Positions 1-29,950 of a stretch of DNA of 64,000 nt are shown one piece after another. The stretch covers positions 124,001 through 188,000 of IMG/VR virus record IMGVR_UViG_3300017917_001342; one strand, written 5' to 3'. The translations under genes were made by a program, and so were the position numbers. The notes under the pieces are model-generated. The model was not told the DNA's origin. It did no database searches and saw only the letters and a program-made list of their open reading frames with translations. Position 1 is the stretch's first letter. Every line of letters starts with the position of its first letter.

Positions 1-76
1 GGCTTAAAGCAGCGGTTTGCTAAACCGTCGAGGGTCGAAAGGCCCTCCACTGGTTCGAATCCAGTACGCTCCGCCA
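1..76 (+). tRNA. tRNA-Ser(GCT), 5' end truncated by window edge
   Basis: anticodon arm CGGTT-TGCTAA-ACCG, long variable arm, GGTTCGAATCC T arm, CCA. Confidence 0.9.
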
Positions 77-314
77 ATAAAGTTGTCATTAACCGGTTGA
101 CACTGTAACCTAAACCATATAGTAATATGGCTGTAGCAAACGGAGAACTGCAATGGATATGGACTTTGAAGACTATCTGAACTATGTTCGTCAACTGCTT
201 GAGCAAGCCGAAGAAGACGGCTTTGAGATTGACGGATAACTGACACTCGGTACTGCTTGGCGGTTAAAGCAGCTAAGTCGCCTTTGTTCCTAGAGGTAGA
301 GCCACACACTTAAT

Positions 315-398
315 GGGTCGTACCCCGCAAGGTGCGGGAGCGGACTGTAACTCCGTCGGGGAAACCCACGCTTGGTTCGATTCCAAGACGACCCACCA
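315..398 (+). tRNA. tRNA-Tyr(GTA)
   Basis: GGGTCGT/ACGACCC acceptor, CTGTAAC loop, long variable arm, ACCA. Confidence 0.9.
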
Positions 399-486
399 AA
401 TACTAGGTAAGGCCCAAGGTTGGATACACGGTTGTGTGAAGGTTTGGGAGAAGCAGCAGAGCGAGAGGATGGGGCTGCGTGCTGTA

Positions 487-777
487 TTACTTTGCTTCTA
501 ATGTATCGAGACGATGCTCTAACACTGCAATGGCTTGTGAATTAGCTGCAATTAGTTCTTTGAGGTCAGCTCTAAGCTTTTCTCGTTCTAATTCGCTGTT
601 AACATTCATTGCCGGTTGATTGTCGTCTGTTACTACTACAGTGACTTTTGCTTTGAGATTGAGTATTTCTTCTTGCATGCTAATCATTGAGGATATAACG
701 TAGATAACACCCGATGTTAGCACTGGCAGAAATGCAAATACTACTTTTTCTAAAATACTACTCATGCTATGCTCCAA
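487..777 (-). CDS. membrane-anchored coiled-coil protein
   Basis: N-terminal hydrophobic helix then heptad-rich C-terminus; TAAATA motif just upstream on - strand. Confidence 0.55.
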   Translation of the reverse strand: MEHSMSSILEKVVFAFLPVLTSGVIYVISSMISMQEEILNLKAKVTVVVTDDNQPAMNVNSELEREKLRADLKELIAANSQAIAVLEHRLDTLEAK

Positions 778-801
778 ATTGCATACATATTTAAAGATTT
801 T

Positions 802-878
802 TGTCCCTTAGCTCAGGTGGTTAGAGCGAAGAGCTGATAACTCTTAGGTCGGTGGTTCGAGTCCACCAGGGACAACCA
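802..878 (+). tRNA. tRNA-Ile(GAT)
   Basis: cloverleaf, AGAG-CTGATAA-CTCT, ACCA. Confidence 0.92.
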
Positions 879-887
879 AACTAGGAG

Positions 888-1097
888 ATGTCAATGCCAC
901 AATTTAACTGTGATAGAGAATGGTGGTCTACTTTAACCAAAGAAGAACAAGATCACTGGCTTGATTTTGCAGAAAGTTGTGGTGCGCCTAGAGAACCGTT
1001 TTTAGTTGATCGCAATCCGGATTATCCAGATTTGGTTTGCATGCCCTGTGTTACTGTTGATATAGACGATGACGAATTAATAGAATTACTCCCGTAG
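888..1097 (+). CDS. small acidic hypothetical protein
   Basis: AGGAG RBS; 3' end overlaps the 5' end of tRNA-Glu. Confidence 0.5.
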   Translation: MSMPQFNCDREWWSTLTKEEQDHWLDFAESCGAPREPFLVDRNPDYPDLVCMPCVTVDIDDDELIELLP

Positions 1098-1165
1098 GAC
1101 TACTCGGTGATGGTCGCTGGCCTTTCAAGTCGGAGAAATGGGTTCGAAACCCATACGGGGGACCA
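1089..1165 (+). tRNA. tRNA-Glu(TTC)
   Basis: CTGGC-CTTTCAA-GTCGG, T arm TGGGTTCGAAACCCA, ACCA. Confidence 0.85.
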
Positions 1166-1177
1166 AAATTACTATGT

Positions 1178-1335
1178 GCCTGCGATGGCGAAATTGGAGA
1201 GACGCACCGGCAGGTGAGGCCGGCGGGCTCTAAGGAGTAGCAGTGAGCGAATGGGAGTAGGTCCGGAACGAAACCGCTAGCAATAGAATGCGAAAGTTAC
1301 CCCACATGTAGGTTCAAATCCTACTCGCAGCACCA
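1178..1335 (+). ncRNA. CCA-ended tRNA-like RNA with 84-nt variable region
   Basis: CTGCGA/TCGCAG acceptor, D-like arm, CCGGC/GCCGG stem, GTAGG-TTCAAAT-CCTAC, ACCA. Confidence 0.65.
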
Positions 1336-1361
1336 TTATTATTGTCGTGTAACCTCTGTAC

Positions 1362-1441
1362 GCTGTCGACATACGGGGGTATAGATAGGCTAGCGCAAGC
1401 CTGAAAGTGTATGTGGGTGCAACTCCTACCACGACAGCCAA
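1362..1441 (+). ncRNA. D-armless tRNA-like RNA (copy 1)
   Basis: GCTGTCG/CGACAGC stem, CATAC/GTATG arm, GTGGG-TGCAACT-CCTAC T-like arm. Confidence 0.5.
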
Positions 1442-1631
1442 ACAAAAGGTTCGAGAATGAATGAAGAATTATTAAAACAAGCAGAAATTGCATTGGGATC
1501 GTCATTCCGTCTTATGGAACAATATTACTTCTTAAAAAAACGCGGCTGGCATTGTTATTGGAATCTAGATACTGCTATTGCGCATGCAGCAAAAAATGTT
1601 AAATCATTGATTTGGTGTTAATACCAATCAT

Positions 1632-1707
1632 CCCTAGGTAGCTCAGTTGGTAGAGCACGTGCCTGAAGAGCATGGTGTCGGCGGTTCGATCCCGTCCCTA
1701 GGGGCCA
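1632..1707 (+). tRNA. tRNA-Phe(GAA)
   Basis: cloverleaf, CTGAAGA loop, CCA. Confidence 0.92.
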
Positions 1708-1746
1708 TTAGATCAAGTCTAGCTGATCTCGAAATAAGCTAGACCC

Positions 1747-1814
1747 GCTCCTGCAAGAGGATATACAGTTGTTCGAGCGACTGTATGTGGGATCGTTCCC
1801 CACCAGGAGTATCA
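1747..1814 (+). ncRNA. D-armless tRNA-like RNA (copy 2)
   Basis: GCTCCTG/CAGGAGT stem, 9-bp ATACAGTTG/CGACTGTAT arm, GTGGG-ATCGTTC-CCCAC. Confidence 0.5.
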
Positions 1815-1820
1815 AATATC

Positions 1821-1903
1821 GCGGGCGTGGTGGAATGGTAGACACAGGAGACTTAAAATCTCCCGCTTGATGCATGTCGGTTCGAGTCCGACCGCCCGCA
1901 CCA
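1821..1903 (+). tRNA. tRNA-Leu(TAA)
   Basis: GGAGA-CTTAAAA-TCTCC, long variable arm, ACCA. Confidence 0.93.
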
Positions 1904-1948
1904 AAATATAAGGTACGATAAATACTCACATAATTGGGAGTATTGGTT

Positions 1949-2452
1949 ATGCCTAGTAGAGAATTGCCGTGGATAGCAGAAGGTAAAACTGTTTTTGGTT
2001 TACACGAAACCAATAATAATCGACAACTTAGAGAGTGGCTTGTAAGTGATCGTAAAACACTAGGCGACCCCAAAGCGTTACCGTGGTGCGGCGATTACGT
2101 TGAAACTGCTATTAAGAAAAGTTTACCAAAAGAACCATTTACTGGTCCGCTTGCAGACAACCCATATTGGGCAAGAAACTGGATGAGTTTTGGTGTAGCT
2201 ACTAAACCTGTATATGGTGCAGTTGCAGTTTTCCAAAGAGAAGGCGGCGGCGGCCATGTTGGGTTTCTAGTAGGTGAAGATGCTACAGACTATTATGTAC
2301 TAGGTGGTAACCAGTCAAATGCTGTTAACATTAGCAGAATAGATAAAAAGCGTTGTTTAGGTACAAGATGGCCGAGCAGTTACAACAATCTTGGATTGAC
2401 ATTGCCTAGACTTTCTGCTACTAATATACCGAAAACAACAAACGAATTTTAA
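1949..2452 (+). CDS. TIGR02594-family NlpC/P60-like cell-wall hydrolase
   Basis: motifs LPWIAE, PWCGDYV, GGGHVGF, VLGGNQS. Confidence 0.8.
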   Translation: MPSRELPWIAEGKTVFGLHETNNNRQLREWLVSDRKTLGDPKALPWCGDYVETAIKKSLPKEPFTGPLADNPYWARNWMSFGVATKPVYGAVAVFQREGGGGHVGFLVGEDATDYYVLGGNQSNAVNISRIDKKRCLGTRWPSSYNNLGLTLPRLSATNIPKTTNEF

Positions 2453-2458
2453 GACTAT

Positions 2459-2533
2459 TGGGAGATAGTTCAGTGGTAGAACACGGGTTTTTGGTACCCG
2501 GTGTCGGGGGTTCGAGCCCTCCTCTCCCAGCCA
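2459..2533 (+). tRNA. tRNA-Gln(TTG)
   Basis: TGGGAGA/TCTCCCA, CGGGT-TTTTGGT-ACCCG, GCCA. Confidence 0.88.
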
Positions 2534-2540
2534 ATTATGT

Positions 2541-2617
2541 CAGGGTGTAGCTTAGCCTGGTAAAGTGCCGGACCTGGACTCCGGAGACCGTTGGTTCAAC
2601 TCCAACTACCCTGACCA
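2541..2617 (+). tRNA. tRNA-Pro(TGG), C at position 33
   Basis: CAGGGTG/TACCCTG, CCGGA-CCTGGAC-TCCGG, ACCA. Confidence 0.8.
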
Positions 2618-2625
2618 AACTATAT

Positions 2626-2702
2626 CTGGGTATAGCTCAGTCTGATAGAGTGCTGCACTCGGAATGCAGAGGCCGCTGGTTTGAATCCAGTTACCCAGAC
2701 CA
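2626..2702 (+). tRNA. tRNA-Pro(CGG)
   Basis: CTGCA-CTCGGAA-TGCAG, ACCA. Confidence 0.88.
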
Positions 2703-2707
2703 AACAC

Positions 2708-2715
2708 TATAAATA
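2708..2715 (+). promoter_or_regulatory. T4-like late promoter TATAAATA
   Basis: exact TATAAATA 5 nt before ATG at 2720; TAAATA recurs ahead of ORFs at 1917, 8664, 24561, 27118, 29966, 56802 and on - strand at 793 and 15743. Confidence 0.55.
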
Positions 2716-2719
2716 CTGT

Positions 2720-3022
2720 ATGCTTATAAGAGAAATACTTTCAGAACTAACATTCATGGGCAGTCCTTGCACAAAGGATTGCAGCGGACACAAAGCTGGC
2801 TATGAATGGGGCATACGTCACAAAGGCAGAACTGCTAAAAGTTGGAGCAACAGTTTCAACAACGGCACGGATATTGCTAAACAAAAAATTGCAATGCGTC
2901 CACAAGGTGGGGGTAAGCTGCCGGGTTATGTAAGCCAAACACCTAGTGCAGTCCGTAAACGTGCTCAACGAGCAGCTAGACCTGCTGTAGCACAGCCGCC
3001 GCAAGCACCTGTTGCAGAATAA
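2720..3022 (+). CDS. hypothetical phage protein (CTKDCSGHKAGYEW motif)
   Basis: ORF directly downstream of TATAAATA. Confidence 0.65.
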   Translation: MLIREILSELTFMGSPCTKDCSGHKAGYEWGIRHKGRTAKSWSNSFNNGTDIAKQKIAMRPQGGGKLPGYVSQTPSAVRKRAQRAARPAVAQPPQAPVAE

Positions 3023-3027
3023 ATTAT

Positions 3028-3116
3028 AGGCATCCGGCGACGATGGAGTGTCGTGCTGGTCTCCAAAACCAGTGTCTGTAAAGACTTAGCGAGTTCGAAT
3101 CTCGCGATGCCTGCCA
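3028..3116 (+). tRNA. tRNA-Trp(CCA) with long variable arm
   Basis: AGGCATC/GATGCCT, CTGGT-CTCCAAA-ACCAG, GCCA. Confidence 0.8.
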
Positions 3117-3161
3117 AAAAAGAACTTGTATTAAACGAGTTAAATAGTATACTTAAAAAGT

Positions 3162-3238
3162 CGGAGTGTAGCTCAGTTTGGTAGAGCGCCTGGTTTGGGA
3201 CCAGGATGTCGTGGGTTCAAATCCTGCCACTCCGACCA
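3162..3238 (+). tRNA. tRNA-Pro(TGG)
   Basis: CGGAGTG/CACTCCG, CCTGG-TTTGGGA-CCAGG. Confidence 0.93.
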
Positions 3239-3263
3239 TTTTATTTTGTACTGTGGGGCAATA

Positions 3264-3410
3264 ATGTGTAAGTCTAGTATAGAATACGCAGAATTAGCAG
3301 GTATCAACATATCTGCGTCAAATCTTTCAGCAAAAAAAGACTTGACAAAAGACGAAGAAACTGTTTTAACTTGGCTTACAAAACGTGCAGAATATTTGAA
3401 AAAACTATAG
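3264..3410 (+). CDS. small hypothetical protein
   Basis: fills spacer between tRNAs; ATG at 3264. Confidence 0.45.
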   Translation: MCKSSIEYAELAGINISASNLSAKKDLTKDEETVLTWLTKRAEYLKKL

Positions 3411-3414
3411 TTAC

Positions 3415-3491
3415 GCCTTCGTAGCTCAGTGGACTAGAGCGGTGCGCTTCGAACGCATTGGCCGGGGGTTCGAATCCCTCCGAGGGCTCCA
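3415..3491 (+). tRNA. tRNA-Arg(TCG)
   Basis: GTGCG-CTTCGAA-CGCAT, TCCA. Confidence 0.9.
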
Positions 3492-3556
3492 TTTTAACCT
3501 GTGAACACTGTGTTCACCCTGTATCAGTAAGCAGGCGCGGTATGTGAGAGGACAAT

Positions 3557-3817
3557 ATGAAAACACCCGATGAAAAACAAAAATTCTACGAAACATGCAG
3601 TGCAATATTGAACATTGCACATGAATATAATACTCCTGTAAGACGTAGAACAAGATGGAATACAAGACGACTTGGTAACGGTAGATATCCGGGCTTTGGA
3701 CTAATTCAATGCTTTGGCAGTACTGTGCGAGTTGTTAGTAAACAAGGTACGCGAATGTTCAAAACCTACGAAGAAGTTTATGAATATTTGCATAAAACTA
3801 TTAACATTATAGAATAA
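3557..3817 (+). CDS. hypothetical protein
   Basis: GAGG RBS, 86 aa. Confidence 0.6.
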   Translation: MKTPDEKQKFYETCSAILNIAHEYNTPVRRRTRWNTRRLGNGRYPGFGLIQCFGSTVRVVSKQGTRMFKTYEEVYEYLHKTINIIE

Positions 3818-3819
3818 AT

Positions 3820-3893
3820 GGCTGCGTGATGAAATGGTATCATACCGGATTGTCTATCCGAGGTCGTGGGTTCGATTCCCATCGCGGTCGCCA
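3820..3893 (+). tRNA. tRNA-Asp(GTC)
   Basis: CGGA-TTGTCTA-TCCG, GCCA. Confidence 0.88.
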
Positions 3894-3900
3894 ATTTTTA

Positions 3901-3990
3901 GGATAGATGGCCGAGAGGCTTAAGGCGTTGCTCTCGAAAAGCAAAGGCGGGTAACACCGTCCGTGAGTTCGAATCTCACTCTATCCGCCA
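3901..3990 (+). tRNA. tRNA-Ser(CGA)
   Basis: TTGCT-CTCGAAA-AGCAA, long variable arm, GCCA. Confidence 0.92.
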
Positions 3991-4001
3991 TAGTGAATTT
4001 T

Positions 4002-4077
4002 GGGGTCTTAGCTCAGTTGGGAGAGCGGTAGCTTTGCAAGCTTCAGGTCATCGGTTCGATCCCGATAGGCTCCACCA
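4002..4077 (+). tRNA. tRNA-Ala(TGC)
   Basis: GGGGTCT acceptor with G3.U70, TTTGCAA loop. Confidence 0.93.
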
Positions 4078-4080
4078 AAA

Positions 4081-4213
4081 TTAAAGTACTGCGAAAGTGG
4101 TCCTACGGGAGATACGGGTATCTTCCAGTTAAAACAAAAACCCTCCGACGAGTGGACGTAATGCGTCAGAAAACATGCTATTTGATACGACATGCAATGT
4201 CGCAGTACTTTAA
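4081..4213 (+). ncRNA. structured spacer RNA closed by a perfect 14-bp stem
   Basis: TTAAAGTACTGCGA / TCGCAGTACTTTAA with internal hairpins. Confidence 0.5.
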
Positions 4214-4221
4214 ACTATAAC

Positions 4222-4296
4222 GCCCTAATAGCTCAGTGGTAGAGCAACCGCCTTGTAAGCGGTAGGCCGGGAGTTCAAATCTCTCTTGGGGCACCA
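4222..4296 (+). tRNA. tRNA-Thr(TGT)
   Basis: ACCGC-CTTGTAA-GCGGT. Confidence 0.92.
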
Positions 4297-4302
4297 TAAT
4301 AT

Positions 4303-4377
4303 GCGGGATTAGCGCAGTGGTAGCGCACCTCCTTTACACGGAGAGGGTCGGGAGTTCGAATCTCTCATCCCGCACCA
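4303..4377 (+). tRNA. tRNA-Val(TAC)
   Basis: CTCC-TTTACAC-GGAG. Confidence 0.92.
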
Positions 4378-4400
4378 TATTATCTGTATAACTAAGTTGT

Positions 4401-5177
4401 ATGCAGGATACCAAGATGTCGTCTAACCTTTATATAGATAAATTCAAAAAAACCGTTTTAAATCCAAATATAGTTTGGGACACTGATGAAAATACTGACA
4501 TGTGGGTGTTAGATGTGTTTGGATTTGATCGAACTGGTACTTTTATCGATGCAGGTGCAGCCGGAAGAAGCAACAGTTACAACTTAGAAACACACTTTAA
4601 CTGGTCCGGTATTTGTTTAGAACCACACGAAAAATCCTATAAAGAACTAGTCGAATCTGGTAGAAAATTAGTATTAAACAAATGTCTATACGGATACAGC
4701 GGTGAAGTTGAATTCTATGAGTGCAATGGTATTGTACCCGGTAAAACTAACAAAAATGGTGGCGATTGGGTGTCTGATCAATTAAGCTGCATACCGCAAC
4801 ATATTATGCCATGGCATGAAAACGATGTAAAATCAACTGGTAAACTGGTTAGAAAAACTGCTGTTACAATTAGCGAATTACTAGCTACCTATAACATTCA
4901 AACACCTATAGAACTGTTATTGATGGACATCGAAGGGTCTGAAGAATCTGTAATAGAAACGTTACCGTTCGATAGTTGTGTATTTTTGTCAATGGTAATA
5001 GAAAACGGTTTACGATTTGCTGAGTTGCTGTATAATAACAATTACTATATGGTAGAAAATCCCTATAGAGAAAAACCCTACTACGATTATTACTTTTTAC
5101 ACGAGTCGATGATACAACAGTATCCACATAAAATTTACTCGTTAAGTGACATAATAAACATGCGAAATACAAATTAA
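4401..5177 (+). CDS. FkbM-family SAM-dependent methyltransferase
   Basis: FIDAGA motif I, NWSGICLEP, LLMDIEGSE. Confidence 0.75.
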   Translation: MQDTKMSSNLYIDKFKKTVLNPNIVWDTDENTDMWVLDVFGFDRTGTFIDAGAAGRSNSYNLETHFNWSGICLEPHEKSYKELVESGRKLVLNKCLYGYSGEVEFYECNGIVPGKTNKNGGDWVSDQLSCIPQHIMPWHENDVKSTGKLVRKTAVTISELLATYNIQTPIELLLMDIEGSEESVIETLPFDSCVFLSMVIENGLRFAELLYNNNYYMVENPYREKPYYDYYFLHESMIQQYPHKIYSLSDIINMRNTN

Positions 5178-5178
5178 T

Positions 5179-5254
5179 GGCCTGTTAGTCGAGTGGTTAA
5201 GACGCCTGCCTGTCACGCAGGAGAACACCGGTTCAATCCCGGTACAGGTCGCCA
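5179..5254 (+). tRNA. tRNA-Asp(GTC)
   Basis: CCTGC-CTGTCAC-GCAGG. Confidence 0.93.
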
Positions 5255-24540: not shown

Positions 24541-24586
24541 TATGTTTTCCATTGGTTAGAGATAAATACTCTAACCAGGAGCAATA

Positions 24587-24919
24587 ATGACATCATTCAC
24601 TTGTAGAACATGCGGCATAGAAGGTGAAGAAAACTTCTATAAAACTGCAAAGTATCAATGCAAGAAGTGCTGGAATCAGCGCACTTACAAAACAGGCATT
24701 GACAAGATCAATAAACTTAAATCTGAACTAGGCGGATGCTGTGCGCGATGCGGTTACGATAAGTATCTAGGCGCACTTGAGTTCCACCATTTGGATCCCA
24801 CAGTAAAAGAATTTGCACTAGGACACAAGAGGGGGCTGTCTGAAGAAGCACTTCGAAAAGAGATTAACAAGTGCATCCTACTGTGTGCGAACTGTCATAG
24901 AGAAGAACATCAAGTCTAA
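24587..24919 (+). mobile_element. HNH endonuclease inserted in a tRNA-Arg gene
   Basis: CARCGY..ALEFHH..LLCANCHREEH; stop codon lies in the TCTAA anticodon loop of the orphan 3' tRNA half. Confidence 0.8.
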
Positions 24920-24957
24920 GCAGTGGGTCGCAGGTTCGAGTCCTGCAGGGACCGCCA
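24915..24957 (+). pseudogene. 3' half of the disrupted tRNA-Arg(TCT)
   Basis: TCTAA-GCAGT-GGGTC-GCAGGTTCGAGTCCTGC-AGGGACC-GCCA. Confidence 0.75.
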
Positions 24958-25001
24958 TTTTAATTGACACAGTACAAGTTCTGTGCTATAAATAAGTTAA
25001 T

Positions 25002-25076
25002 GCGGGTGTAACTCAGAGGTAGAGTGTCAGCCTTCCAAGCTGTTCGTCGTGGGTTCGATTCCCATCGCCCGCTCCA
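25002..25076 (+). tRNA. tRNA-Gly(TCC)
   Basis: CAGC-CTTCCAA-GCTG. Confidence 0.92.
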
Positions 25077-25082
25077 AATTAC

Positions 25083-25157
25083 AGACTGTTAGTTCATTAG
25101 TAGAACGCTTGCGTGACATGCAAGAGGTAGTGGGAGCGTAACCCACACAGTCTACCA
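25083..25157 (+). tRNA. tRNA-Val(GAC), non-canonical T loop
   Basis: CTTGC-GTGACAT-GCAAG; T loop AGCGTAA. Confidence 0.75.
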
Positions 25158-25167
25158 GATAGAAAAC

Positions 25168-25839
25168 ATGTTCACATATCAACACATACGTAACGAAGTT
25201 AAACGACGCTGTAAAGCACAGCCGGCAACAATGATAGTGCCATGGGTATTAGATTATATCAATGCACACTTAGCAACACTGCCACCTAACAGTGTTATAG
25301 CAGAACTAGGTACATTTGTTGGTGGTACAGCAGTTTTATTTGCACAATCGCATCCATCGTTTGTGATACACACATATGATATAAACAAGTTTGACAATTT
25401 TGCCAACAGTTCAATGCTACAGTCATTAGATAAACGATACGACCTGCCATTGCTTAACAAAGATGATATTGTTGAAATTCAACGGTTGCATTTAGAAGAC
25501 TACCCTAATATAGTAATGCATGTTGAAGATTCGGCTAAGATCACAGTTGATAATTTATCAGCAGTACTAATAGACGATAATCGAGACGAGCACTCACTAT
25601 TTGAGTTGTTACACACTATTTGGCCGTTGTTGAATGATAACGGTATGATTTTTGCAGATGACGCAGATAATCCACATATACACAATGCGTTTTATAAATT
25701 TGCTAAAATCAAAGATTTAGAGTTGACAATATACAGTAAATGCATTAAATTAGTAAAAACAGCAGCAATGTCGGACAAAAGACAGTTTGATTTTAAAGAC
25801 ACCCTGTTGCACAGAATAACAATAGGAGACCACGTATGA
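25168..25839 (+). CDS. class I SAM-dependent methyltransferase
   Basis: IAELGTFVGGT, YDI, VLIDD. Confidence 0.65.
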   Translation: MFTYQHIRNEVKRRCKAQPATMIVPWVLDYINAHLATLPPNSVIAELGTFVGGTAVLFAQSHPSFVIHTYDINKFDNFANSSMLQSLDKRYDLPLLNKDDIVEIQRLHLEDYPNIVMHVEDSAKITVDNLSAVLIDDNRDEHSLFELLHTIWPLLNDNGMIFADDADNPHIHNAFYKFAKIKDLELTIYSKCIKLVKTAAMSDKRQFDFKDTLLHRITIGDHV

Positions 25840-25949
25840 GAAAAGCAGTTCACAAAGCAAACGTTAAGCGTCAGGCGCTTATGCTCAAGCGTGGTTGGGT
25901 AGGTCGAAAGAATCGCAAGCAAAAGCGCATGGCTGTTGCTGCAAGTTAA
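25836..25949 (+). CDS. 37-aa basic peptide
   Basis: AGGAG RBS; MRKAVHKANVKRQALMLKRGWVGRKNRKQKRMAVAAS. Confidence 0.45.
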   Translation: MRKAVHKANVKRQALMLKRGWVGRKNRKQKRMAVAAS

Positions 25950-25956
25950 ATTATTT

Positions 25957-26032
25957 GGGGTGTTAGCTCAGCTGGGAGAGCGGTAGCTTTGCAAGCTTCA
26001 GGTCAGGAGTTCGATCCTCCTACACTCCACCA
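25957..26032 (+). tRNA. tRNA-Ala(TGC)
   Basis: cloverleaf, TTTGCAA loop. Confidence 0.93.
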
Positions 26033-26050
26033 AAATATAAGGATGATATC

Positions 26051-26233
26051 ATGTTTGGTTTTTTGAATTCGACTCTTAAAGCAGCAGCAGCCGTAGTTGA
26101 TATTCCTGTTTCTATTGCAGCCGATGTGGTTACACTTGGCGGAGCATTGACAGATAAAGATACACTGTATACTACAGATGCAGCAAGTCGACTGGTTCAA
26201 AATGTCAAGAACATGACCGATCCAAAGGAATAA
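26051..26233 (+). CDS. small hypothetical protein
   Basis: AAGGA RBS. Confidence 0.65.
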   Translation: MFGFLNSTLKAAAAVVDIPVSIAADVVTLGGALTDKDTLYTTDAASRLVQNVKNMTDPKE

Positions 26234-26234
26234 T

Positions 26235-26309
26235 GCGGAATTAGCTCAGTGGTAGAGCGTCTCGTTTACACCGAGAATGTCGGGAGTTCGAAACTCTCAT
26301 TCCGCACCA
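26235..26309 (+). tRNA. tRNA-Val(TAC)
   Basis: TCTCG-TTTACAC-CGAGA. Confidence 0.92.
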
Positions 26310-26317
26310 TAAACTAG

Positions 26318-26763
26318 TTATAGAACAACTGTTGCGCGGCGCCAATCGGCGAAAGGTTGGGCAGTTGTCATAGCAAAATAGATTTGAGCGATAGAATGTT
26401 ATGCGCGGTGCACTCTGAATGCAACAGGCGATAACAACATGGCAATAATCAAATACCGTTCGTAACGATAGAATGTTATGCGCGATGCCCTTAGAAGGTA
26501 GCAGGCGATAACAACATGGTGAGAACAACAATAGAACATGCGATTTTACTGAATAGACTGCATGTCATTGTAAATTAGAAAGCAGAATACAACATAGTTG
26601 TTGCTATAGAATGTATTCTTTTTATATTAAAATAGACTGCTAAACACTATAGAGCCTGTGTATCACTAACAAAACATTATCTAGTAAGCACAGGCCATAG
26701 ACAAGAAAACTGTTGCTAAACCTATAGAGTAGCTTTTCTTTTAGATAGAAAGGATGCCATAGG
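26318..26763 (+). repeat. array of six hairpins sharing an AGAR/(Y or A)C internal loop
   Basis: NNAT-AGAR-[stem-loop]-HC-ATNN at 26318, 26389, 26466, 26529, 26647, 26722. Confidence 0.65.
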
Positions 26764-26836
26764 AGGCAAAAATAAATTGCAAAATTATCGAATATTCTGC
26801 GTATGAATATCATAATTAGGCATAAATTAACTTAGT

Positions 26837-26912
26837 GCTGTCATAGCTCAGCTGGTAGAGCATCTGATTTGTAATCAGAGGGTCGGGAGTTCAAGTCTCT
26901 CTGGCAGCACCA
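26837..26912 (+). tRNA. tRNA-Thr(TGT)
   Basis: TCTGA-TTTGTAA-TCAGA. Confidence 0.93.
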
Positions 26913-26923
26913 TTCAATACAAT

Positions 26924-26998
26924 GTCGCGTTAGCAAAACGTTAATGCGCTGCCCCGCAAAGGTAGAGGACTGTGGTTAAATTCCCAGACGCGACTCCA
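26924..26998 (+). tRNA. tRNA-Cys(GCA), divergent
   Basis: GTCGCGT/ACGCGAC-TCCA, CTGCC-CCGCAAA-GGTAG; D loop lacks GG. Confidence 0.7.
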
Positions 26999-27005
26999 AT
27001 TCAAT

Positions 27006-27089
27006 GCGACTGTGGTGGAATGGTAGACACGCTAGCTTGAGGTGCTAGTGGCGCAAGCCGTGGAAGTTCGAATCTTCTCAGTCGCACCA
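27006..27089 (+). tRNA. tRNA-Leu(GAG)
   Basis: CTAGC-TTGAGGT-GCTAG. Confidence 0.93.
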
Positions 27090-27129
27090 AATATTTCTCA
27101 ATAGTAGTTTTTTCACAGTAAATATCTTT

Positions 27130-28251
27130 ATGGAAAACACTGATAAAGATTTTTATTGTGCAGCACCGTTTGTGAATAGATCGTACGATCCAAACGGTAA
27201 AGTTAAACCTTGTTGCGAATGGCACAACTTAGATACAACTGTCGACGATGAACAACAGTTGATTTCTCTACGATCTCAATTTTTACAAAACAAACCAAAT
27301 CCCTGTTGTAAAGTCTGTCATAAAACAGAAGCTGCTGGGGTACAATCTACTAGAAATGATTTTAACAACAGGTACGGTAGACCAACTGTACCTGTGCTGC
27401 GTCATTTGGATCTAAGTCTAGGCAATCTATGTAATTTCAAATGTAGAATGTGCAGCAGTTTTTTTAGCACAAAATGGGCCAGTGACGAACAAGCATTGGG
27501 ATTGATTCCACACAAGTTGTACAGACGTACCTGGGATGAATTGAAACATTTAGACATATCAAATGTAGATATGATCAAGTTCAAAGGTGGCGAGCCTTTT
27601 CTAGAACAAGAAACAATGATCAATACCCTAACTGCAATCTTATCTCAAAAAGGCTCGTTAGAAAATATTACAGTTGTTGTAAACACAAATGGATCTATAG
27701 AAATAGAACCAAGATTGATAGAGTTGTTGTCTCTTTGCAAAACTGTTAACTTAACAGTTAGTATAGATGGATACGGTAAAGTAAACGAATATCAACGCAC
27801 AGGCGCAGTATGGAATGTAATAGAAAAAAATCTATTAGATTTTCAAAAAAATCTCAACAATAACTTTGACTTATCTATATGGTCTGTGTGGACTATACTC
27901 AACATTACTAACTTAAAAACACTGTTAGGCTGGGTTACAACCAACTTGCCTAGATACAAAATCTATGGTACTACGCTGCATTTTCCAGAAGAGTTTGCTA
28001 TACGCAATATACCAGACCAACTAAAAACGCAATTTTTTAATGACATTAGCAATTGGTGTGAACTCGATCACAACGACGGTGTGCTAGAAAACAAATTACA
28101 GATTTTAAATGAGTTACAACAACAGCCTATAAAAACGATCAACGAAGTTAAATCTTACATAGATAGCCTTGACAAAGTTAGAAATGAGTCGTTTTCTTTA
28201 ATAGATCCTGTGATGTATGCGGCATTTTTTGAATCAACTGTTGACATATGA
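27130..28251 (+). CDS. radical SAM protein with twitch/SPASM domain
   Basis: CAAPF..PCC, NLCNFKCRMC, GGEPF. Confidence 0.88.
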   Translation: MENTDKDFYCAAPFVNRSYDPNGKVKPCCEWHNLDTTVDDEQQLISLRSQFLQNKPNPCCKVCHKTEAAGVQSTRNDFNNRYGRPTVPVLRHLDLSLGNLCNFKCRMCSSFFSTKWASDEQALGLIPHKLYRRTWDELKHLDISNVDMIKFKGGEPFLEQETMINTLTAILSQKGSLENITVVVNTNGSIEIEPRLIELLSLCKTVNLTVSIDGYGKVNEYQRTGAVWNVIEKNLLDFQKNLNNNFDLSIWSVWTILNITNLKTLLGWVTTNLPRYKIYGTTLHFPEEFAIRNIPDQLKTQFFNDISNWCELDHNDGVLENKLQILNELQQQPIKTINEVKSYIDSLDKVRNESFSLIDPVMYAAFFESTVDI

Positions 28252-28306
28252 TATAAGACCTATTATCTTCTACGCTAATCATTGACAACCCTTGTGAGGT
28301 GACATT

Positions 28307-28693
28307 ATGGCTAGCAAAACTGATATGCTTATTGCTAAAGCACTTAGCACCGATAGCGAAGATGAAGCTATTGCATGCCTTAAAATGGCACGTAAACAAG
28401 GTGCATCTCATACCGCAGTTTCTACTAACAAGTCAACTCAAGACTGGGAAGCACTTGCACGCAAGTATCATAAAATTGCCTATGAAAATCAAGAAGACCT
28501 TAAACGTACCAAAGCTGCATTGAAATCACTGATGGTTTCAAAAACCATACATGCTGCGTACAGCAGTCTACAAGAAAACGATGCTGCTAAACTGCGTAAA
28601 CAGTTGTCGGCAGCAAAGAATGAAACTTACAAATGGAAAATGGTAAGTTTTGGTATACTGTGTTTTTGTACTTTTTTAATGTTTTTGATTTAA
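28307..28693 (+). CDS. coiled-coil protein with C-terminal TM helix
   Basis: GAGG RBS; EAIACLKMARK N-terminus. Confidence 0.65.
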   Translation: MASKTDMLIAKALSTDSEDEAIACLKMARKQGASHTAVSTNKSTQDWEALARKYHKIAYENQEDLKRTKAALKSLMVSKTIHAAYSSLQENDAAKLRKQLSAAKNETYKWKMVSFGILCFCTFLMFLI

Positions 28694-28798
28694 TTTACTG
28701 TTGACAACGTTCAAGTAACACACTATATTAACAACATGAAGCAGCACAAATTGAGTTGAAAAACAAAAAAGTGCTGCTTCAAAAAAAATAAAAAACAG

Positions 28799-28868
28799 TT
28801 GACACGCTGTACGTAAGGTGTTAAAGTAACTGAGTAAACAACAAAACGGTTTACATGCTCTTTAAAAA
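28799..28868 (+). promoter_or_regulatory. sigma70 promoter + hairpin + boxA leader (unit C)
   Basis: TTGACA-17-TAAAGT; GTAAAC/GTTTAC; TGCTCTTTAAAAA. Confidence 0.65.
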
Positions 28869-28914
28869 TTTACATGTGGTCCTAGCGCAAGCGATAATGG
28901 ACAAGAAGCGAAAG

Positions 28915-29036
28915 TTTCTGTTTACACATATTGTAACTGCTTTAGGTAATAGCATTTCGGTAATGCGCACTTGCTTAATCGAGTGAGATACGGTTCGAGT
29001 CCGCACCAAGCAAATTACAATAGCTGTAAACAGAAA
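28915..29036 (+). ncRNA. tRNA-like cloverleaf at the tip of a long helix
   Basis: TTTCTGTTTACA/TGTAAACAGAAA; GCATT-TCGGT-AATGC; CACTTG/CGAGTG; CGG-TTCGAGT-CCG. Confidence 0.6.
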
Positions 29037-29039
29037 TTG

Positions 29040-29920
29040 CACGATATTAACGTTGTGAAACGTGGATGTTGTGTTTACGCATTGGGGGTTTAGCCTCAAC
29101 AGGATAAGTGCAGTGATGCACCCAAAGCTAGAAAGCCTACATACTAGCGCCAGCAGTGGTCCATCTAAACAAGCCTGAACTAGACTTGACTCGGGTTAAA
29201 CCGAAAGCAAGTCCCGTCCGTAGAAAGGCGGTAGGCAGTAAGTTAGGAATAGTGTCCGAAAGGATAGTTGCAGAGCCAGTCGGTGAGCGATAAGAGGGTT
29301 GGCGCCCAAACACTGTTCAGCCAAACTAACGAATGCTGAAAGTTAACAGGTAGGTACAGAGTCTGAGCCCGCAAGCAAAGGCATGGTACCATTTCGAGAG
29401 TGGAAGGGTTAGGCCCCGGATACTTGAAGAAACACTGATTAGTCCGCAAGACGAAAGGTATGAGGTGTGCTGTATTGGGTATGTCAAAAGCATATTCAGC
29501 AGCCGAGGTAGCACATCTCGGATAGGTTGCAAAATCAGCTAATGGTAAGCTAATTCCCTTCTAAGGAATCGATTGCAGGTTCAACTCCTGTTTTTGAAAA
29601 ATGCAAAGTCTACCTCGGTATGTAGTGTAAGGTGTCAAATACTTGAGGCGCAAGCCAATCAAGTTCAACAAAGCTCGCAAGGCAGCGTTGATTTGTGCTA
29701 GAAGTTTCGTAGCCCGCAAGGCTTAATGGTCCGCAAGATCAACGGAAAACAAGGTGCAGAATAGCTACATACGACGAGTCTACTGCCTGACTCTAAAAAC
29801 GGCGACACTGTTAATGGACTAGGTTACCGCAAGGGACTTAGTGGATGTCGGAAGAAAGCGGCTCGCAAGGCTGGCAATAATGTCCGAAGCGTTAACATCG
29901 AACGTGTAATCTCAGCGTTT
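29040..29920 (+). ncRNA. GOLLD-like large ncRNA (5' boundary uncertain)
   Basis: ~0.9 kb without credible ORF, at least 9 GCAA/GAAA-capped hairpins, GGTAGGTAC..GAGTCTGAG, GAGGTAGCACATCTC and terminal GTAATCTCAG blocks recalled from GOLLD; tRNA-cluster context. Confidence 0.6.
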
Positions 29921-29924
29921 GTTT

Positions 29925-29950
29925 TAAAAAGGTCCTTCGGGACCTTTTCT
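29925..29950 (+). terminator. intrinsic terminator
   Basis: AAAAGGTCC-TTCG-GGACCTTTT. Confidence 0.85.

What the first reader, a model, noticed from the sequence alone, without database searches (positions are those of the whole stretch)
1..29950. Candidate system: a phage arsenal of RNAs that mimic the translation apparatus, interleaved with the tRNA cluster
Seen: spacers between the canonical tRNAs are filled with discrete folded domains that copy pieces of the translation machinery but cannot work as normal tRNAs or rRNA. They include a 23S GTPase-centre copy, permuted tRNA elbows, D-armless and insert-bearing CCA RNAs, tRNA cores on long helices, tandem T-loop modules and a GOLLD-like RNA with tRNA domains. 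Three units have rrn-style boxA leaders. The region also encodes an L7/L12-CTD-like protein, and the window encodes Pth2 and RNA end-healing enzymes. Established: many anti-phage defences cleave tRNAs or otherwise block translation, and phage tRNAs can counter them. Inference: these RNAs form a coordinated decoy/sponge or translation-remodelling system rather than tRNA debris.
Basis: partly seen in the sequence, partly recalled or inferred. Interest (0 to 1): 0.9.

Follow-up and report, generated by a model that had tools for sequence, protein, structure and literature searches.

The report
Phage island of translation-mimic RNAs
A 519-kb phage genome carries, between its tRNA genes, conserved folded RNAs that copy parts of the ribosome and of tRNA; one of them, a stand-alone copy of the ribosome's L11-binding GTPase centre, is a widespread, apparently undescribed phage RNA family also present in cultured jumbo phages.

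Summary
Window 1-29,950, from a 518,643-bp IMG/VR phage contig, carries about 42 same-strand tRNA genes. Between them lie discrete non-tRNA RNAs.

- **GOLLD:** a true GOLLD RNA (234 bits).
- **GAC mimic (10056-10270):** reproduces helices 43/44 of the 23S GTPase-associated centre (GAC). I found 102 distinct homologues in about 87 lineages, including phages pf16, GAP32, CBB and XacN1. They covary strongly, and neighbouring tRNAs are 419 same-strand against 1 opposite. It has no Rfam family, and I found no paper describing it.
- **"LST" family:** five copies of a long-stem T-arm RNA family, present in 23 viral contigs. Its architecture grades into Y-RNA-like (YrlA-like) permuted tRNA modules.
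- **Leaders:** three conserved promoter-hairpin-boxA leaders.
- **S RNA:** a conserved 334-nt RNA of unknown class.
- **Proteins:** bL12-CTD-like protein, Pth2, HAD_SAK_2 and Macro domain confirmed.

Most modules have homologues with compensatory changes in other phages, so they are not debris. Exceptions are one HNH-associated tRNA fragment and three or four unsupported units.

The "coordinated decoy system" reading is only partly supported. Mimicry is shown; coordination, expression and function are not. The GAC mimic also occurs without the other modules in unrelated phages. My best inference is that these RNAs bind proteins that recognise rRNA or tRNA surfaces, with uL11 or the stalk proteins as the likely partner of the GAC mimic.

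The parts
315..29600 (+). Array of about 42 tRNA genes: 40 ARAGORN calls plus Rfam-only 26924-26995, and a partial tRNA at 1-73. It includes a CUA-anticodon suppressor at 5519-5593.
1176..1334 (+). tRNA-Leu-like RNA ending in CCA, with an ~85-nt variable arm and an aberrant anticodon loop (G at position 33). The homologue at L053 9035-9189 has a UAG anticodon loop.
1344..1440 (+). Cloverleaf-like RNA ending in GCCA with a non-canonical T-loop (UGCAACU). No homologue found; status open.
6354..6453 (+). Conserved long hairpin RNA (B1). Homologues at L064 (94%) and L053 (74.5%).
6580..6665 (+). T-arm core on a 9-10 bp closing stem (B3). Homologues at L056 (87%) and L075 (81%).
7531..7609 (+). tRNA-Arg(ACG)-like RNA ending in CCA. 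The D-arm is missing from its normal place and a D-loop-like stretch sits after the anticodon arm. It is the positional orthologue of a canonical tRNA-Arg(ACG) in L002.
7910..8116 (+). Small ORF resembling the bL12 (L7/L12) C-terminal domain.
   Evidence: Pfam PF00542 26.1 bits against a 25.9 cut-off. The only PDB sequence matches are bL12, E 1e-3. Homologues in L006, L052 and L053.
8157..8264 (+). LST RNA copy C: conserved terminal helix, covarying second helix, three hairpins and a T-arm. Fold z-score -7.3.
8431..8540 (+). RNA ending in CCA with a 7-bp acceptor stem, a T-arm and a ~76-nt interior. No homologue and no folding signal; possibly degenerate.
8560..8640 (+). Two adjacent T-loop hairpins. 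No homologue and no folding signal; status open.
10056..10270 (+). GAC-mimic RNA. A closing stem P1 replaces H42. It keeps H43 with the 1067 loop, the junction, a helix inserted between positions 1090 and 1091, and the H44 apex with the 1095 loop.
15817..15845 (+). Intrinsic-terminator-like hairpin plus T run, ending the preceding unit.
15877..15943 (+). Leader 1: TTGACC-17-TATGTT promoter-like site, hairpin, then boxA GCTCTTTGACAA.
16230..16384 (+). LST-type hairpin with the family's terminal helix but no T-loop.
16391..16459 (+). Leader 2: TTGACG-17-TACATT, hairpin, then boxA GTTCTTTGACAA.
16470..16575 (+). E1: cloverleaf-shaped core with a T-arm on a 12-bp stem, no CCA. The homologue in L066 carries the LST terminal helix.
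16585..16704 (+). E2: permuted tRNA-like RNA (T-arm followed by a D-arm-like hairpin) closed by an 11-12 bp stem. Homologue at L053 1328-1421.
16722..16822 (+). E3: YrlA-like RNA with a long stem, T-arm, 7-bp acceptor-like hairpin and a canonical D-arm.
   Evidence: Rfam RF02553 44.8 bits, E 6e-8, below the gathering score of 69. The minimum-energy fold gives the same four-way junction.
16860..17376 (+). Unassigned non-coding stretch Q. Its first 180 nt are 78% identical to L066.
17766..17868 (+). F1: T-loop core on a 12-bp stem. Homologues at L070 (92%) and L053 (73%) with compensatory stem changes.
17873..17992 (+). LST RNA copy F2 with two tandem T-arms. Homologues at L005 and L056. Fold z-score -5.1.
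18000..18151 (+). LST RNA copy F3. Homologues at L053 and L070, with compensatory changes in the stem and T-arm.
19357..19690 (+). S RNA: conserved non-coding RNA of unknown class, downstream of tRNA-Asn, ending in a terminator at 19661-19675.
   Evidence: 84% identity to L002 without 3-base periodicity. Fifteen predicted pairs are kept through changes on both sides.
24915..24957 (+). 3' fragment of a tRNA-Arg(tct) immediately after the HNH endonuclease ORF 24587-24919: genuine debris.
28799..28868 (+). Leader 3: TTGACA promoter-like site, hairpin, then boxA-like GCTCTTTAAAAA. Conserved in L002.
28869..29918 (+). GOLLD RNA. The variable 5' domain holds LST-type module 28916-29035. The conserved 3' domain is 29462-29918, with an embedded tRNA-Arg(tct)-like unit at 29527-29600.
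   Evidence: RF02032 234.1 bits against a gathering score of 150
9458..9973 (+). HAD_SAK_2 (RNA-repair-associated HAD) gene directly upstream of tRNA-Thr and the GAC mimic. Context only.
10567..11016 (+). Macro-domain gene 300 nt downstream of the GAC mimic. Context only; the adjacency is not conserved.
37167..37568 (+). Peptidyl-tRNA hydrolase Pth2. Context only.

Best explanation
The region is a same-strand stable-RNA island of a huge phage.

**Expression and release (inferred)**
- tRNA genes and about 15 non-decoding structured RNA genes are transcribed from sigma-70-type promoters.
- These promoters carry hairpin-plus-boxA (rrn/lambda-type antitermination) leaders.
- The RNAs are probably released by the tRNA-processing enzymes and by cleavage at long terminal stems.

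**Classes of non-tRNA RNA**
1. A free-standing mimic of the 23S rRNA GTPase-associated centre (GAC; H42-H44, nt 1051-1108).
2. Long-stem T-arm RNAs ('LST'), including permuted tRNA-like, Y-RNA-like modules.
3. Aberrant tRNA-like RNAs ending in CCA.
4. GOLLD.
5. At least one unclassified RNA (S).

**What is shown**
- These are conserved, covarying RNA structures that reproduce rRNA or tRNA surfaces.
- They sit in tRNA arrays, in tRNA orientation.

**What is inferred**
- They act in trans by binding host or phage proteins that recognise those surfaces.
- For the GAC mimic the most likely ligand is ribosomal protein uL11, possibly with the L10/L12 stalk base. The nucleotides that build the L11-binding fold are invariant, whereas the loop tips that contact elongation factors vary. 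The RNA would titrate, recruit or protect that protein.
- For the LST and YrlA-like RNAs the likely ligands are T-arm or elbow readers, or a Ro60-type RNA-binding protein.
For: **GAC mimic**
- Rfam's LSU model aligns 10066-10116 to the H43/H44 positions, and the match to real Salmonella 23S is direct.
- I analysed 102 distinct homologues:
  - pair 1058-1080 is paired in 102/102 (UA 40, GC 32, AU 24, CG 3);
  - pair 1082-1086 is paired in 99/102, with three pair types;
  - the base pair of the inserted helix covaries (G-C 62, A-U 30, U-A 6, C-G 2);
  - U1060, G1071, C1072 and A1088 are conserved (100%, 100%, 100% and 99%), while A1067 is only 79% A.
- The closing stem P1 is 90% paired, against 37-45% in shifted controls and 0/2000 permutations.
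- A covariance model built without the window's sequence scores the window element at 100 bits (E 1e-27) and genuine 23S GAC at 49.5 bits.
- There are 419 same-strand tRNAs against 1 opposite-strand tRNA within 3 kb. Thirty-six elements abut a tRNA.
- The element is present, unannotated, in cultured phages pf16, 4_4572 and GAP32.
- The strict pattern gave 8 viral-contig loci (7 contigs) but only 1 hit in 185,579 species genomes.

**LST family**
- Present in 23 viral contigs.
- The second helix is 90% paired, against 22-52% in shifted controls and 0/2000 permutations. The T-arms covary.
- Its interiors include permuted tRNA-like cores.
- Rfam's YrlA model gives sub-threshold hits: window E3 44.8 bits, L056 32 bits.

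**Leaders**
- Three paralogous promoter-hairpin-boxA units recur upstream of these RNAs in relatives.

**Non-coding status**
- Substitutions against L002 show no 3-base periodicity in S, GOLLD or the GAC mimic. Flanking coding sequences do show it.
Against: - There are no transcript, processing or binding data; everything functional is inference.
- No partner protein gene is conserved next to the GAC mimic.
- The helix inserted at 1090/1091 and the U1101A change could alter L11 binding.
- Variable 1067 and 1096/1097 positions argue against factor or thiopeptide binding, but do not prove L11 binding.
- Units 1344-1440, 8431-8540 and 8560-8640 have no homologue and no folding signal.
- No Ro60/TROVE gene lies in the window.
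- The sequence-conserved LST terminal helix could equally be a processing site or the inverted repeat of a mobile element.
Confidence: 0.55

Rival explanations
1. Debris: the modules are decaying fragments of tRNA genes, and of a captured rRNA piece, left by duplication and homing-endonuclease traffic in the tRNA array. They have no function.
For: - 24915-24957 is a tRNA-Arg 3' fragment next to an HNH ORF.
- HNH genes recur in such islands, and T4 has segB inside its tRNA cluster.
- Units 1344-1440, 8431-8540 and 8560-8640 lack homologues and folding signal.
- 7531-7609 replaces a canonical tRNA-Arg of L002.
Against: - The main modules are conserved across divergent phages with compensatory changes.
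- The GAC mimic has about 87 lineages with family-specific features that rRNA lacks.
- The modules match window tRNAs only at the T-loop or D-loop consensus.
Confidence: 0.07
2. One reading: all these RNAs, together with the bL12-like protein, Pth2 and the repair enzymes, form one coordinated decoy or sponge system against tRNA- or ribosome-targeting defences.
For: - The RNAs are clustered on one strand behind shared leaders.
- Counter-defence-type genes lie in the window: Pth2, Macro, HAD_SAK_2, cREC_REC, NadV plus NMNAT/Nudix.
- GAC mimic, LST and GOLLD occur together in this phage clade (window contig; contig 3300027712_001108 via L002/L013/L062; for the L052/L053 contigs GAC mimic and LST only).
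- From memory: a 23S H44 ADP-ribosylating toxin (Tre23) is known, and a Macro gene lies 300 nt from the mimic.
Against: - The GAC mimic occurs alone in many unrelated phages, and no protein neighbour is shared by more than 7 of 87 lineages.
- The Macro adjacency is not conserved.
- No defence target is identified, and there are no functional data.
Confidence: 0.15
3. Y-RNA model for the LST and permuted modules: they are phage Y RNAs. Their conserved terminal helix binds a Ro60-like protein, and their tRNA-like head recruits RNA-repair or decay enzymes acting on damaged tRNAs.
For: - The architecture is that of YrlA (defining features from PMC4201824).
- Relatives encode a 480-aa 'RNA-binding protein' (PHROG 850, DUF2828 + DUF7788). 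Its model has an all-alpha N-terminal half and an alpha/beta C-terminal half.
- That protein sits inside tRNA islands: 66 of 80 loci have tRNAs, 599 tRNAs in all, with 115 orphan T-loops.
- RNA-repair-type genes lie nearby.
Against: - Scores are below Rfam's gathering threshold.
- The GNCGAAN0-1G motif is not present.
- No TROVE or PHROG-850 gene lies in the window.
- There is no sequence link between PHROG 850 and Ro60, and the fold comparison could not be run.
Confidence: 0.25
4. Cis-acting punctuation: the T-arms and long stems are only RNase P, Z or III processing and stability signals for long polycistronic transcripts. The excised pieces have no role of their own.
For: - The modules abut tRNAs and genes on one strand.
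- The long terminal stems resemble rrn RNase III stems, and the leaders are rrn-like.
Against: - This does not explain the exact retention of the GAC tertiary core in 102 sequences.
- It does not explain complete permuted tRNA-like heads with D-arms.
- It does not explain GAC mimics that sit far from any tRNA: 37 of 102 have none within 3 kb.
Confidence: 0.12
5. LST units are miniature mobile elements: conserved terminal inverted repeats with a variable interior that spread within tRNA islands.
For: - The terminal 11-15 bp are conserved in sequence while the interiors differ widely.
- There are five copies in the window. One is inserted in the variable GOLLD 5' domain and is absent from L002.
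Against: - All copies have tRNA orientation.
- The interiors keep canonical T-arms with covarying stems.
- Copies are orthologous between divergent phages.
- No transposase is associated.
Confidence: 0.08

Closest known systems
23S rRNA GTPase-associated centre (H42-H44, nt 1051-1108; binding site of uL11 and thiostrepton)
   Same: - H43 with the 1067 loop, the UUUAAAG junction and the H44 apex GC-GUAAUA-GC are reproduced.
- The same pairs covary (1058-1080, 1082-1086, 1064-1074).
- The core nucleotides U1060, G1071, C1072 and A1088 are conserved.
- Real 23S GAC scores 49.5 bits on the family model.
   Different: - It is a free-standing gene of about 95-450 nt in phage genomes.
- H42 is replaced by an arbitrary covarying stem.
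- A 22-362-nt helix is inserted between positions 1090 and 1091.
- Position 1101 is A.
- The family signature GAGUG at 1087-1091 is present whatever the host.
- Positions 1067 and 1096/1097 are relaxed.
Ribosomal-protein autoregulatory mRNA leaders that mimic rRNA sites (for example the L10 and L1 leaders)
   Same: An RNA outside the ribosome copies an r-protein binding site of rRNA.
   Different: - The phage element is not in a 5' UTR of an r-protein operon.
- It lies in tRNA arrays or intergenic gaps.
- It copies far more of the rRNA sequence.
YrlA / bacterial Y RNAs (RF02553; Chen et al. 2014, PMC4201824)
   Same: A long stem formed by the 5' and 3' ends carries a permuted tRNA-like head: T-arm, acceptor-like hairpin, D-arm.
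   Different: - Scores fall below the gathering threshold.
- There is no GNCGAA motif and no adjacent rsr gene.
- Many LST members carry only T-arms.
- The LST terminal helix has its own conserved sequence.
GOLLD RNA (RF02032)
   Same: Full member: conserved 3' domain, variable 5' domain, location in a phage tRNA island, and a tRNA inside the RNA.
   Different: The 5' domain holds an LST-type module that the close relative L002 lacks. It is preceded by a boxA leader.
Phage T4 rnaC / rnaD (species 1 and 2 stable RNAs in the tRNA cluster)
   Same: - They are non-tRNA stable RNA genes directly after tRNAs in a phage tRNA cluster.
- rnaC carries a canonical T-arm.
- A homing endonuclease sits in the cluster.
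- Their function is still unknown.
   Different: No sequence relation was tested or seen. T4 has two such RNAs; this island has about 15, of several classes.
rrn operon / lambda nut boxA antitermination leaders
   Same: A promoter is followed by a hairpin and a boxA-like GCTCTTTGACAA, ahead of long untranslated RNA genes.
   Different: The leaders are phage-encoded and drive tRNA and ncRNA arrays and GOLLD. Nus-factor binding has not been tested.

Membership tests
GOLLD (RF02032) | Full-length match to the conserved 3' domain at or above Rfam's gathering score | tested here: met
   234.1 bits against 150, model positions 1-416, window 29462-29918. L002 orthologue scores 217 bits.
GOLLD (RF02032) | Variable 5' domain, phage/tRNA-island context, optional tRNA in the linker | tested here: met
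   The conserved non-coding 5' region 29051-29461 is 89% identical to L002. A tRNA-Arg-like unit lies at 29527-29600. The context is as described in bioRxiv 10.1101/2024.12.08.627333.
GOLLD (RF02032) | Assembly into a 14-mer RNA nanocage | not testable with these tools
   Needs cryo-EM or biophysics.
YrlA / bacterial Y RNA (RF02553) | T-arm, acceptor-like hairpin and D-arm in permuted order, closed by a stem of the 5' and 3' ends | tested here: met
   Window 16722-16822. Also 16585-16704 and the LST members L056 2752 and L062 952.
YrlA / bacterial Y RNA (RF02553) | Score at or above the gathering threshold (69 bits) | tested here: not met
   44.8 bits for the window unit. 32 bits for L056.
YrlA / bacterial Y RNA (RF02553) | GNCGAAN0-1G motif in the Ro60-binding strand | tested here: not met
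   The aligned stretch reads GUUUGAAUA. The motif definition comes from PMC4201824.
YrlA / bacterial Y RNA (RF02553) | Encoded next to a Ro60/TROVE (rsr) gene | tested here: not met
   No TROVE hit among the window ORFs scanned. The rest of the 519-kb contig was not examined. Relatives carry a PHROG-850 protein whose relation to Ro60 is unknown.
23S rRNA GAC domain (as a structural mimic) | H43/H44 sequence and base pairs, with covariation at the rRNA's own variable pairs | tested here: met
23S rRNA GAC domain (as a structural mimic) | Conservation of the tertiary-core nucleotides (U1060, G1071, C1072, A1088, the 1091-1100 and 1092-1099 pairs). Their structural roles are from my own knowledge of the L11-RNA crystal structures. 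| tested here: met
   U1060, G1071 and C1072 are invariant and A1088 is 101/102 in 102 sequences whose 5' half was allowed up to 7 mismatches. The 3' half (positions 1091-1104) was fixed by the search pattern, so its invariance carries no information.
23S rRNA gene | Being part of a full-length rRNA gene | tested here: not met
   The element is closed by its own covarying stem and is flanked by tRNAs or protein genes.
23S rRNA GAC domain (as a structural mimic) | Binding of uL11, stalk proteins or thiopeptides | not testable with these tools
   Needs binding assays.
Ribosomal-protein leader | Location in the 5' UTR of an r-protein operon | tested here: not met
   No r-protein gene was seen among the recurring neighbour families. 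65 of 102 elements lie in tRNA arrays.
Canonical tRNA | Cloverleaf with a D-arm in place, a 7-nt anticodon loop with U33, and a normal variable region | tested here: not met
   1176-1334, 1344-1440, 7531-7609 and 8431-8540 are not called by ARAGORN. Only 7531-7609 reaches 29.8 bits on RF00005. Anatomy.
boxA antitermination leader | boxA consensus a short distance downstream of a promoter, ahead of untranslated RNA genes | tested here: met
   6 matches against 1.18 expected. The three + strand copies in 1-30 kb each lie 27-29 nt after a promoter-like site and a hairpin. The leader is conserved in relatives.
boxA antitermination leader | NusB/NusE binding and Rho-resistant transcription | not testable with these tools
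   Needs biochemistry or reporter assays.
T4 rnaC/rnaD-type stable RNAs | Sequence or structure homology to T4 species 1 or 2 RNA | not tested
   Only context and the T-arm of rnaC were compared.

The most novel reading that the evidence does not exclude
The GAC-mimic RNA is a new, widespread class of phage non-coding RNA. It would be the first free-standing viral gene that folds as a functional domain of ribosomal RNA. In this reading it acts in trans on the host ribosomal stalk. It would sequester uL11 or the stalk proteins, which could for example blunt RelA/stringent signalling, or it would intercept a factor or toxin that targets H43/H44. Together with the Y-RNA-like LST family and GOLLD, it would show that phage tRNA islands are general arsenals of translation-apparatus mimics driven by rrn-style antitermination leaders.
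Probability: 0.4. Interest if true: 0.9.

Novelty: new variant of a known kind. Interest (0 to 1): 0.8.

Why it matters
- **An old open question.** Phage tRNA clusters have been known since T4 to carry extra stable RNAs of unknown function (rnaC and rnaD). GOLLD and ROOL are still orphans. This island shows that such RNAs come in several conserved classes, and it supplies a concrete molecular handle.
- **A testable handle.** One class copies the uL11-binding GTPase centre of 23S rRNA nearly base for base, so its ligand can be guessed and tested.
- **Tractable systems exist.** The family is present in cultured phages with workable hosts (pf16 on Pseudomonas putida, Aeromonas phage 4_4572, GAP32, CBB, XacN1). 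The question of what non-tRNA RNAs in phage tRNA islands do therefore becomes directly testable.
- **Possible payoff.** If the mimic binds stalk proteins or a GAC-directed factor, it would be a new way for viruses to manipulate or protect the ribosome.
- **Transcription.** The boxA leaders suggest that phages reuse the rrn antitermination system to transcribe long untranslated arrays.

Tried and rejected
- **Close cultured relative of the window:** none found by megablast beyond tRNA-length matches. The LST region has no match in INPHARED.
- **Rfam:** nothing beyond tRNA, GOLLD and skipping-rope above threshold. The inserts of GAC mimics gave no further rRNA-like hits.
- **r-protein leader idea for the GAC mimic:** rejected on context.
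- **Sarcin-ricin-loop resemblance at ~17020:** the stretch lacks the bulged-G motif by eye, so I dropped it.
- **Conserved protein partner of the GAC mimic:** none in more than 7 of 87 lineages. The top recurring families are one without a Pfam match and an HNH endonuclease; RNA ligase, AAA ATPase and the DUF2828 protein recur in about 3 lineages each.
- **Macro-GAC linkage:** not conserved in L002 or L006.
- **Ro60 link of the PHROG-850 protein:** no sequence match to PDB or NCBIfam.
- **TAG recoding:** TAG is avoided as a stop codon (1 of 42), but reading through it does not lengthen ORFs much.
- **Literature:** searches for a described phage rRNA or GAC mimic found nothing. The motif is not mentioned in the text of Weinberg 2017.
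- **Folding z-scores:** not informative for tRNA-sized units.
- **A structure string for the count of structure pairs:** not typed, to avoid long repeated text. I counted the pairs in scripts instead.

Full report
**Source and general layout**

The window is bases 124,001-188,000 of IMG/VR contig IMGVR_UViG_3300017917_001342, which is 518,643 bp long. It has no close cultured relative.

ARAGORN finds 46 tRNAs, all on the + strand, 40 of them inside the finding. Rfam adds a GOLLD RNA (234 bits), a skipping-rope RNA, and extra tRNA-like hits at 1-73, 7531-7609 and 26924-26995.

By my estimate about 54% of 1-29,950 is protein-coding and about 11% is tRNA. The coding genes include CHAP, an FkbM methyltransferase, an iron permease, HAD_SAK_2, Macro, SbtA, PTOX, four radical-SAM genes and HNH. 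About a third is neither.

**Is the observation more than chance?**

The T-loop motif GGTTCRANYCC occurs 60 times against 6.5 expected. Thirteen perfect copies on the + strand lie outside called tRNAs.

Several spacers fold far better than dinucleotide shuffles, with z-scores from -3.6 to -4.7. Coding-sequence controls give -0.7 to -2.1. Single modules reach -4 to -7.

**The GAC mimic (10056-10270)**

Rfam's bacterial LSU model aligns 10066-10116 to the H43/H44 positions, nearly base for base. Comparison with real Salmonella 23S confirms the match.

The element has these parts:
- a 9-bp closing stem that replaces H42;
- the H43, junction and H44-start motif;
- an insert of 143 nt;
- a 3' motif that restores the H44 apex and the 1095 loop.

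Pattern scans recovered homologues as follows:

| Scan | Result |
|---|---|
| Strict 5' pattern, viral contigs | 8 loci |
| Strict 5' pattern, metagenome contigs | 32 loci |
| Strict 5' pattern, 185,579 species genomes | 1 hit |

Across 102 distinct complete elements, about 87 lineages, the rRNA's own variable pairs covary:
- 1058-1080 is paired in 102/102, with four Watson-Crick types;
- 1082-1086 is paired in 99/102;
- 1064-1074 is C-G or A-U.

Other counts from the same sets:
- The base pair of the inserted helix covaries.
- P1 is 90% paired, against 37-45% for shifted partners and 0/2000 permutations.
- U1060, G1071 and C1072 are invariant and A1088 nearly so (99%), in a 5' half that was allowed up to 7 mismatches.
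- A1067 (79% A) and positions 1096/1097 vary.
- Inserts range from 22 to 362 nt.
- About a quarter share a hairpin with a GNRA or UMAC tetraloop and a covarying stem.

A covariance model built from 30 elements of other phages gave these scores:

| Target | Bits |
|---|---|
| pf16 | 110 |
| Window copy (E 1e-27, the only copy) | 100.4 |
| Aeromonas phage 4_4572 | 96 |
| L052 / L053 | 96 |
| L002 | 90 |
| GAP32 | 87 |
| Genuine 23S GAC | 49.5 |

Genomic context points to tRNA arrays. Sixty-five of 102 elements have same-strand tRNAs within 3 kb. In total there are 419 same-strand tRNAs against 1 opposite-strand tRNA. Thirty-six elements abut a tRNA and nine are flanked on both sides.

No neighbouring protein family recurs in more than 7 lineages.

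Cultured phages carry the element in unannotated gaps. In pf16 it lies between tRNA-Asn and tRNA-Pro. In Aeromonas phage 4_4572 it lies before tRNA-Met. In GAP32 it lies between hypothetical genes. CBB, XacN1, RSP15 and others also match.

Rfam 15 has no such family. Six literature searches and the text of Weinberg 2017 gave no description of it.

**Long-stem T-arm (LST) and Y-RNA-like modules**

Five window units share a sequence-conserved terminal helix, UUCUGUUUUCA at the 5' end pairing with UGAAAACAGAA at the 3' end. They are 8157-8264, 16230-16384, 17873-17992, 18000-18151 and 28916-29035. They also share a covarying second helix and, in four of the five, canonical T-arms.

The pattern occurs in 23 viral contigs. 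Over 21 distinct members the second helix is 90% paired. Shifted controls give 22-52% and permutations give 0/2000. The T-arm stems covary.

The interiors are diverse. Some are complete permuted tRNA-like heads with a T-arm, an acceptor-like hairpin and a D-arm. One of these scores 32 bits on Rfam's YrlA model.

Three further window units relate to this group:
- 16722-16822 scores 44.8 bits on YrlA (E 6e-8, gathering score 69) and folds into exactly that four-way junction.
- 16585-16704 is a second permuted unit, conserved in L053.
- 16470-16575 is a cloverleaf-shaped core whose L066 homologue carries the LST terminal helix.

The YrlA hallmarks are absent from the window: the GNCGAA motif and an adjacent rsr gene (PMC4201824).

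**Are the modules unique decaying copies?**

For most, no. Homologues at 65-94% identity exist in other phage contigs for A1, B1, B3, C, E1, E2, F0-F3, part of Q, S and the GOLLD 5' domain. Compensatory changes appear in the pairwise alignments.

Substitutions between the window and L002 show no 3-base periodicity in S, GOLLD or the GAC mimic. Flanking coding sequences do show it.

The modules match the window's own tRNAs only over the 10-19-nt T-loop or D-loop consensus.

There are exceptions:
- 24915-24957 is a tRNA-Arg 3' fragment directly behind an HNH ORF.
- 1344-1440, 8431-8540 and 8560-8640 have neither homologues nor a folding signal.
- 7531-7609 is the positional orthologue of a canonical tRNA-Arg(ACG) in L002, with its D-arm displaced.
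- 1176-1334 is a conserved tRNA-Leu-like RNA with an ~85-nt variable arm. Its anticodon loop differs between relatives.

**Leaders**

Three paralogous units each have a TTGAC -35 box, a 17-nt spacer, a -10 box, a hairpin and a boxA-like GYTCTTTRAMAA. They lie at 15877-15943, 16391-16459 and 28799-28868. The first follows a strong terminator.

The same leader precedes GOLLD in L002 and precedes LST RNAs in L052/L053, L058, L064-L066 and L075. I infer that they drive Rho-resistant transcription of long untranslated arrays, as in rrn operons.

- The ORF at 7910-8116 reaches Pfam's bL12 C-terminal-domain cut-off (26.1 against 25.9). It matches only bL12 chains in the PDB (E 1e-3, residues 12-45). 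Phage bL12-domain proteins are already known (bioRxiv 10.1101/174177).
- Pth2, HAD_SAK_2, Macro, a metallophosphoesterase and a cREC_REC domain are confirmed.
- No RNA ligase or kinase was found in the window.

**Interpretation**

Shown:
- The region is a conserved stable-RNA island.
- Its non-tRNA members reproduce an rRNA domain or tRNA substructures.

Inferred:
- These RNAs are expressed and processed like their tRNA neighbours.
- They work by binding proteins that read those surfaces.

For the GAC mimic, the conservation pattern favours uL11 or the stalk base as ligand over elongation factors or thiopeptides. The fold-forming core is invariant while the factor-contacting tips are relaxed. 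This remains to be tested.

The 'single coordinated decoy system' reading is weakened by three points:
- the GAC mimic spreads independently of the other modules;
- it lacks any conserved partner gene;
- there is no functional evidence.

**Comparison with known systems**

- GOLLD is a known family, including tRNAs in its linker.
- The YrlA resemblance is architectural only.
- T4 rnaC and rnaD are an old precedent for non-tRNA stable RNAs in a phage tRNA cluster, and rnaC has a T-arm.
- I found no described counterpart for a free-standing rRNA-domain mimic gene.

Noticed in passing
window 5519-5593: There is a tRNA with a CUA anticodon (amber suppressor; ARAGORN labels it 'Pyl'). TAG is almost never used as a stop codon in the window (TAA 34, TGA 7, TAG 1). 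Reading through TAG does not lengthen ORFs much. Similar CUA tRNAs occur in L012, L017 and L019.
   Followed up: partly
L004 13615-15057; L005, L007, L063, L068, L049, L092/L093, L175; L201-L280: A 480-aa protein (Pfam DUF2828 + DUF7788; PHROG 850 'RNA-binding protein') is embedded in phage tRNA islands. Of the 80 best loci, 66 hold tRNAs (599 in ±3 kb) plus 115 orphan T-loop motifs. The AlphaFold model has an all-alpha N-terminal half and an alpha/beta C-terminal half. It may be a Ro60-like partner of tRNA-like RNAs.
   Followed up: partly
window 19357-19690: A conserved 334-nt non-coding RNA of unknown class (S) lies downstream of tRNA-Asn and ends in an intrinsic terminator. Fifteen predicted pairs are kept through changes on both sides relative to L002.
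   Followed up: partly
L002 11350-11476: The orthologue of the window's tRNA-Asn is a 127-nt Rfam tRNA hit, so it carries an insert of about 55 nt that the window copy lacks.
   Followed up: no
window 39057-39173 and 39169-39663: A skipping-rope RNA (RF02924, 46.9 bits) is directly followed by a DUF3307 ORF.
   Followed up: no
window 56857-60436: NMNAT-Nudix and NadV (NAMPT) genes lie side by side. This is the two-gene NAD+ salvage pair known from phages as a counter to NAD-depleting defences (my own knowledge).
   Followed up: no
window 11073-12715, 37580-38545, 51070-52167: The auxiliary genes are SbtA-type bicarbonate transporter, plastoquinol/alternative oxidase, TerC and SAM synthetase. 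The first two are typical of cyanophages, which hints at a cyanobacterial host.
   Followed up: no
window 19730-23461 and 27130-28251: Three tandem paralogous radical-SAM genes of ~410 aa, a fourth further on, and a DUF5662 gene sit inside the tRNA island.
   Followed up: no
window 24464-24957: An intact tRNA-Arg(tct), an HNH endonuclease ORF and a leftover tRNA-Arg 3' half lie in a row. This looks like a homing-endonuclease insertion scar, comparable to segB in the T4 tRNA cluster.
   Followed up: partly
inserts of GAC mimics, e.g. L014, L089, L145, L150, L197, L198: About a quarter of the inserts end in a shared module: GCACCCC, a GNRA or UAAC tetraloop hairpin with a covarying stem, then GGUAAGGC. 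It may be an intramolecular brace for the GAC fold.
   Followed up: partly
L009 3417-3811; L022 5245-5620; L025 9110-9511; L045 3021-3353: tmRNA genes lie inside the tRNA islands of related or GAC-mimic-bearing phage contigs.
   Followed up: no
window 42416-43069: There is a weak, sub-threshold match to Anti-DarT factor A (PF23813, E 0.008).
   Followed up: no
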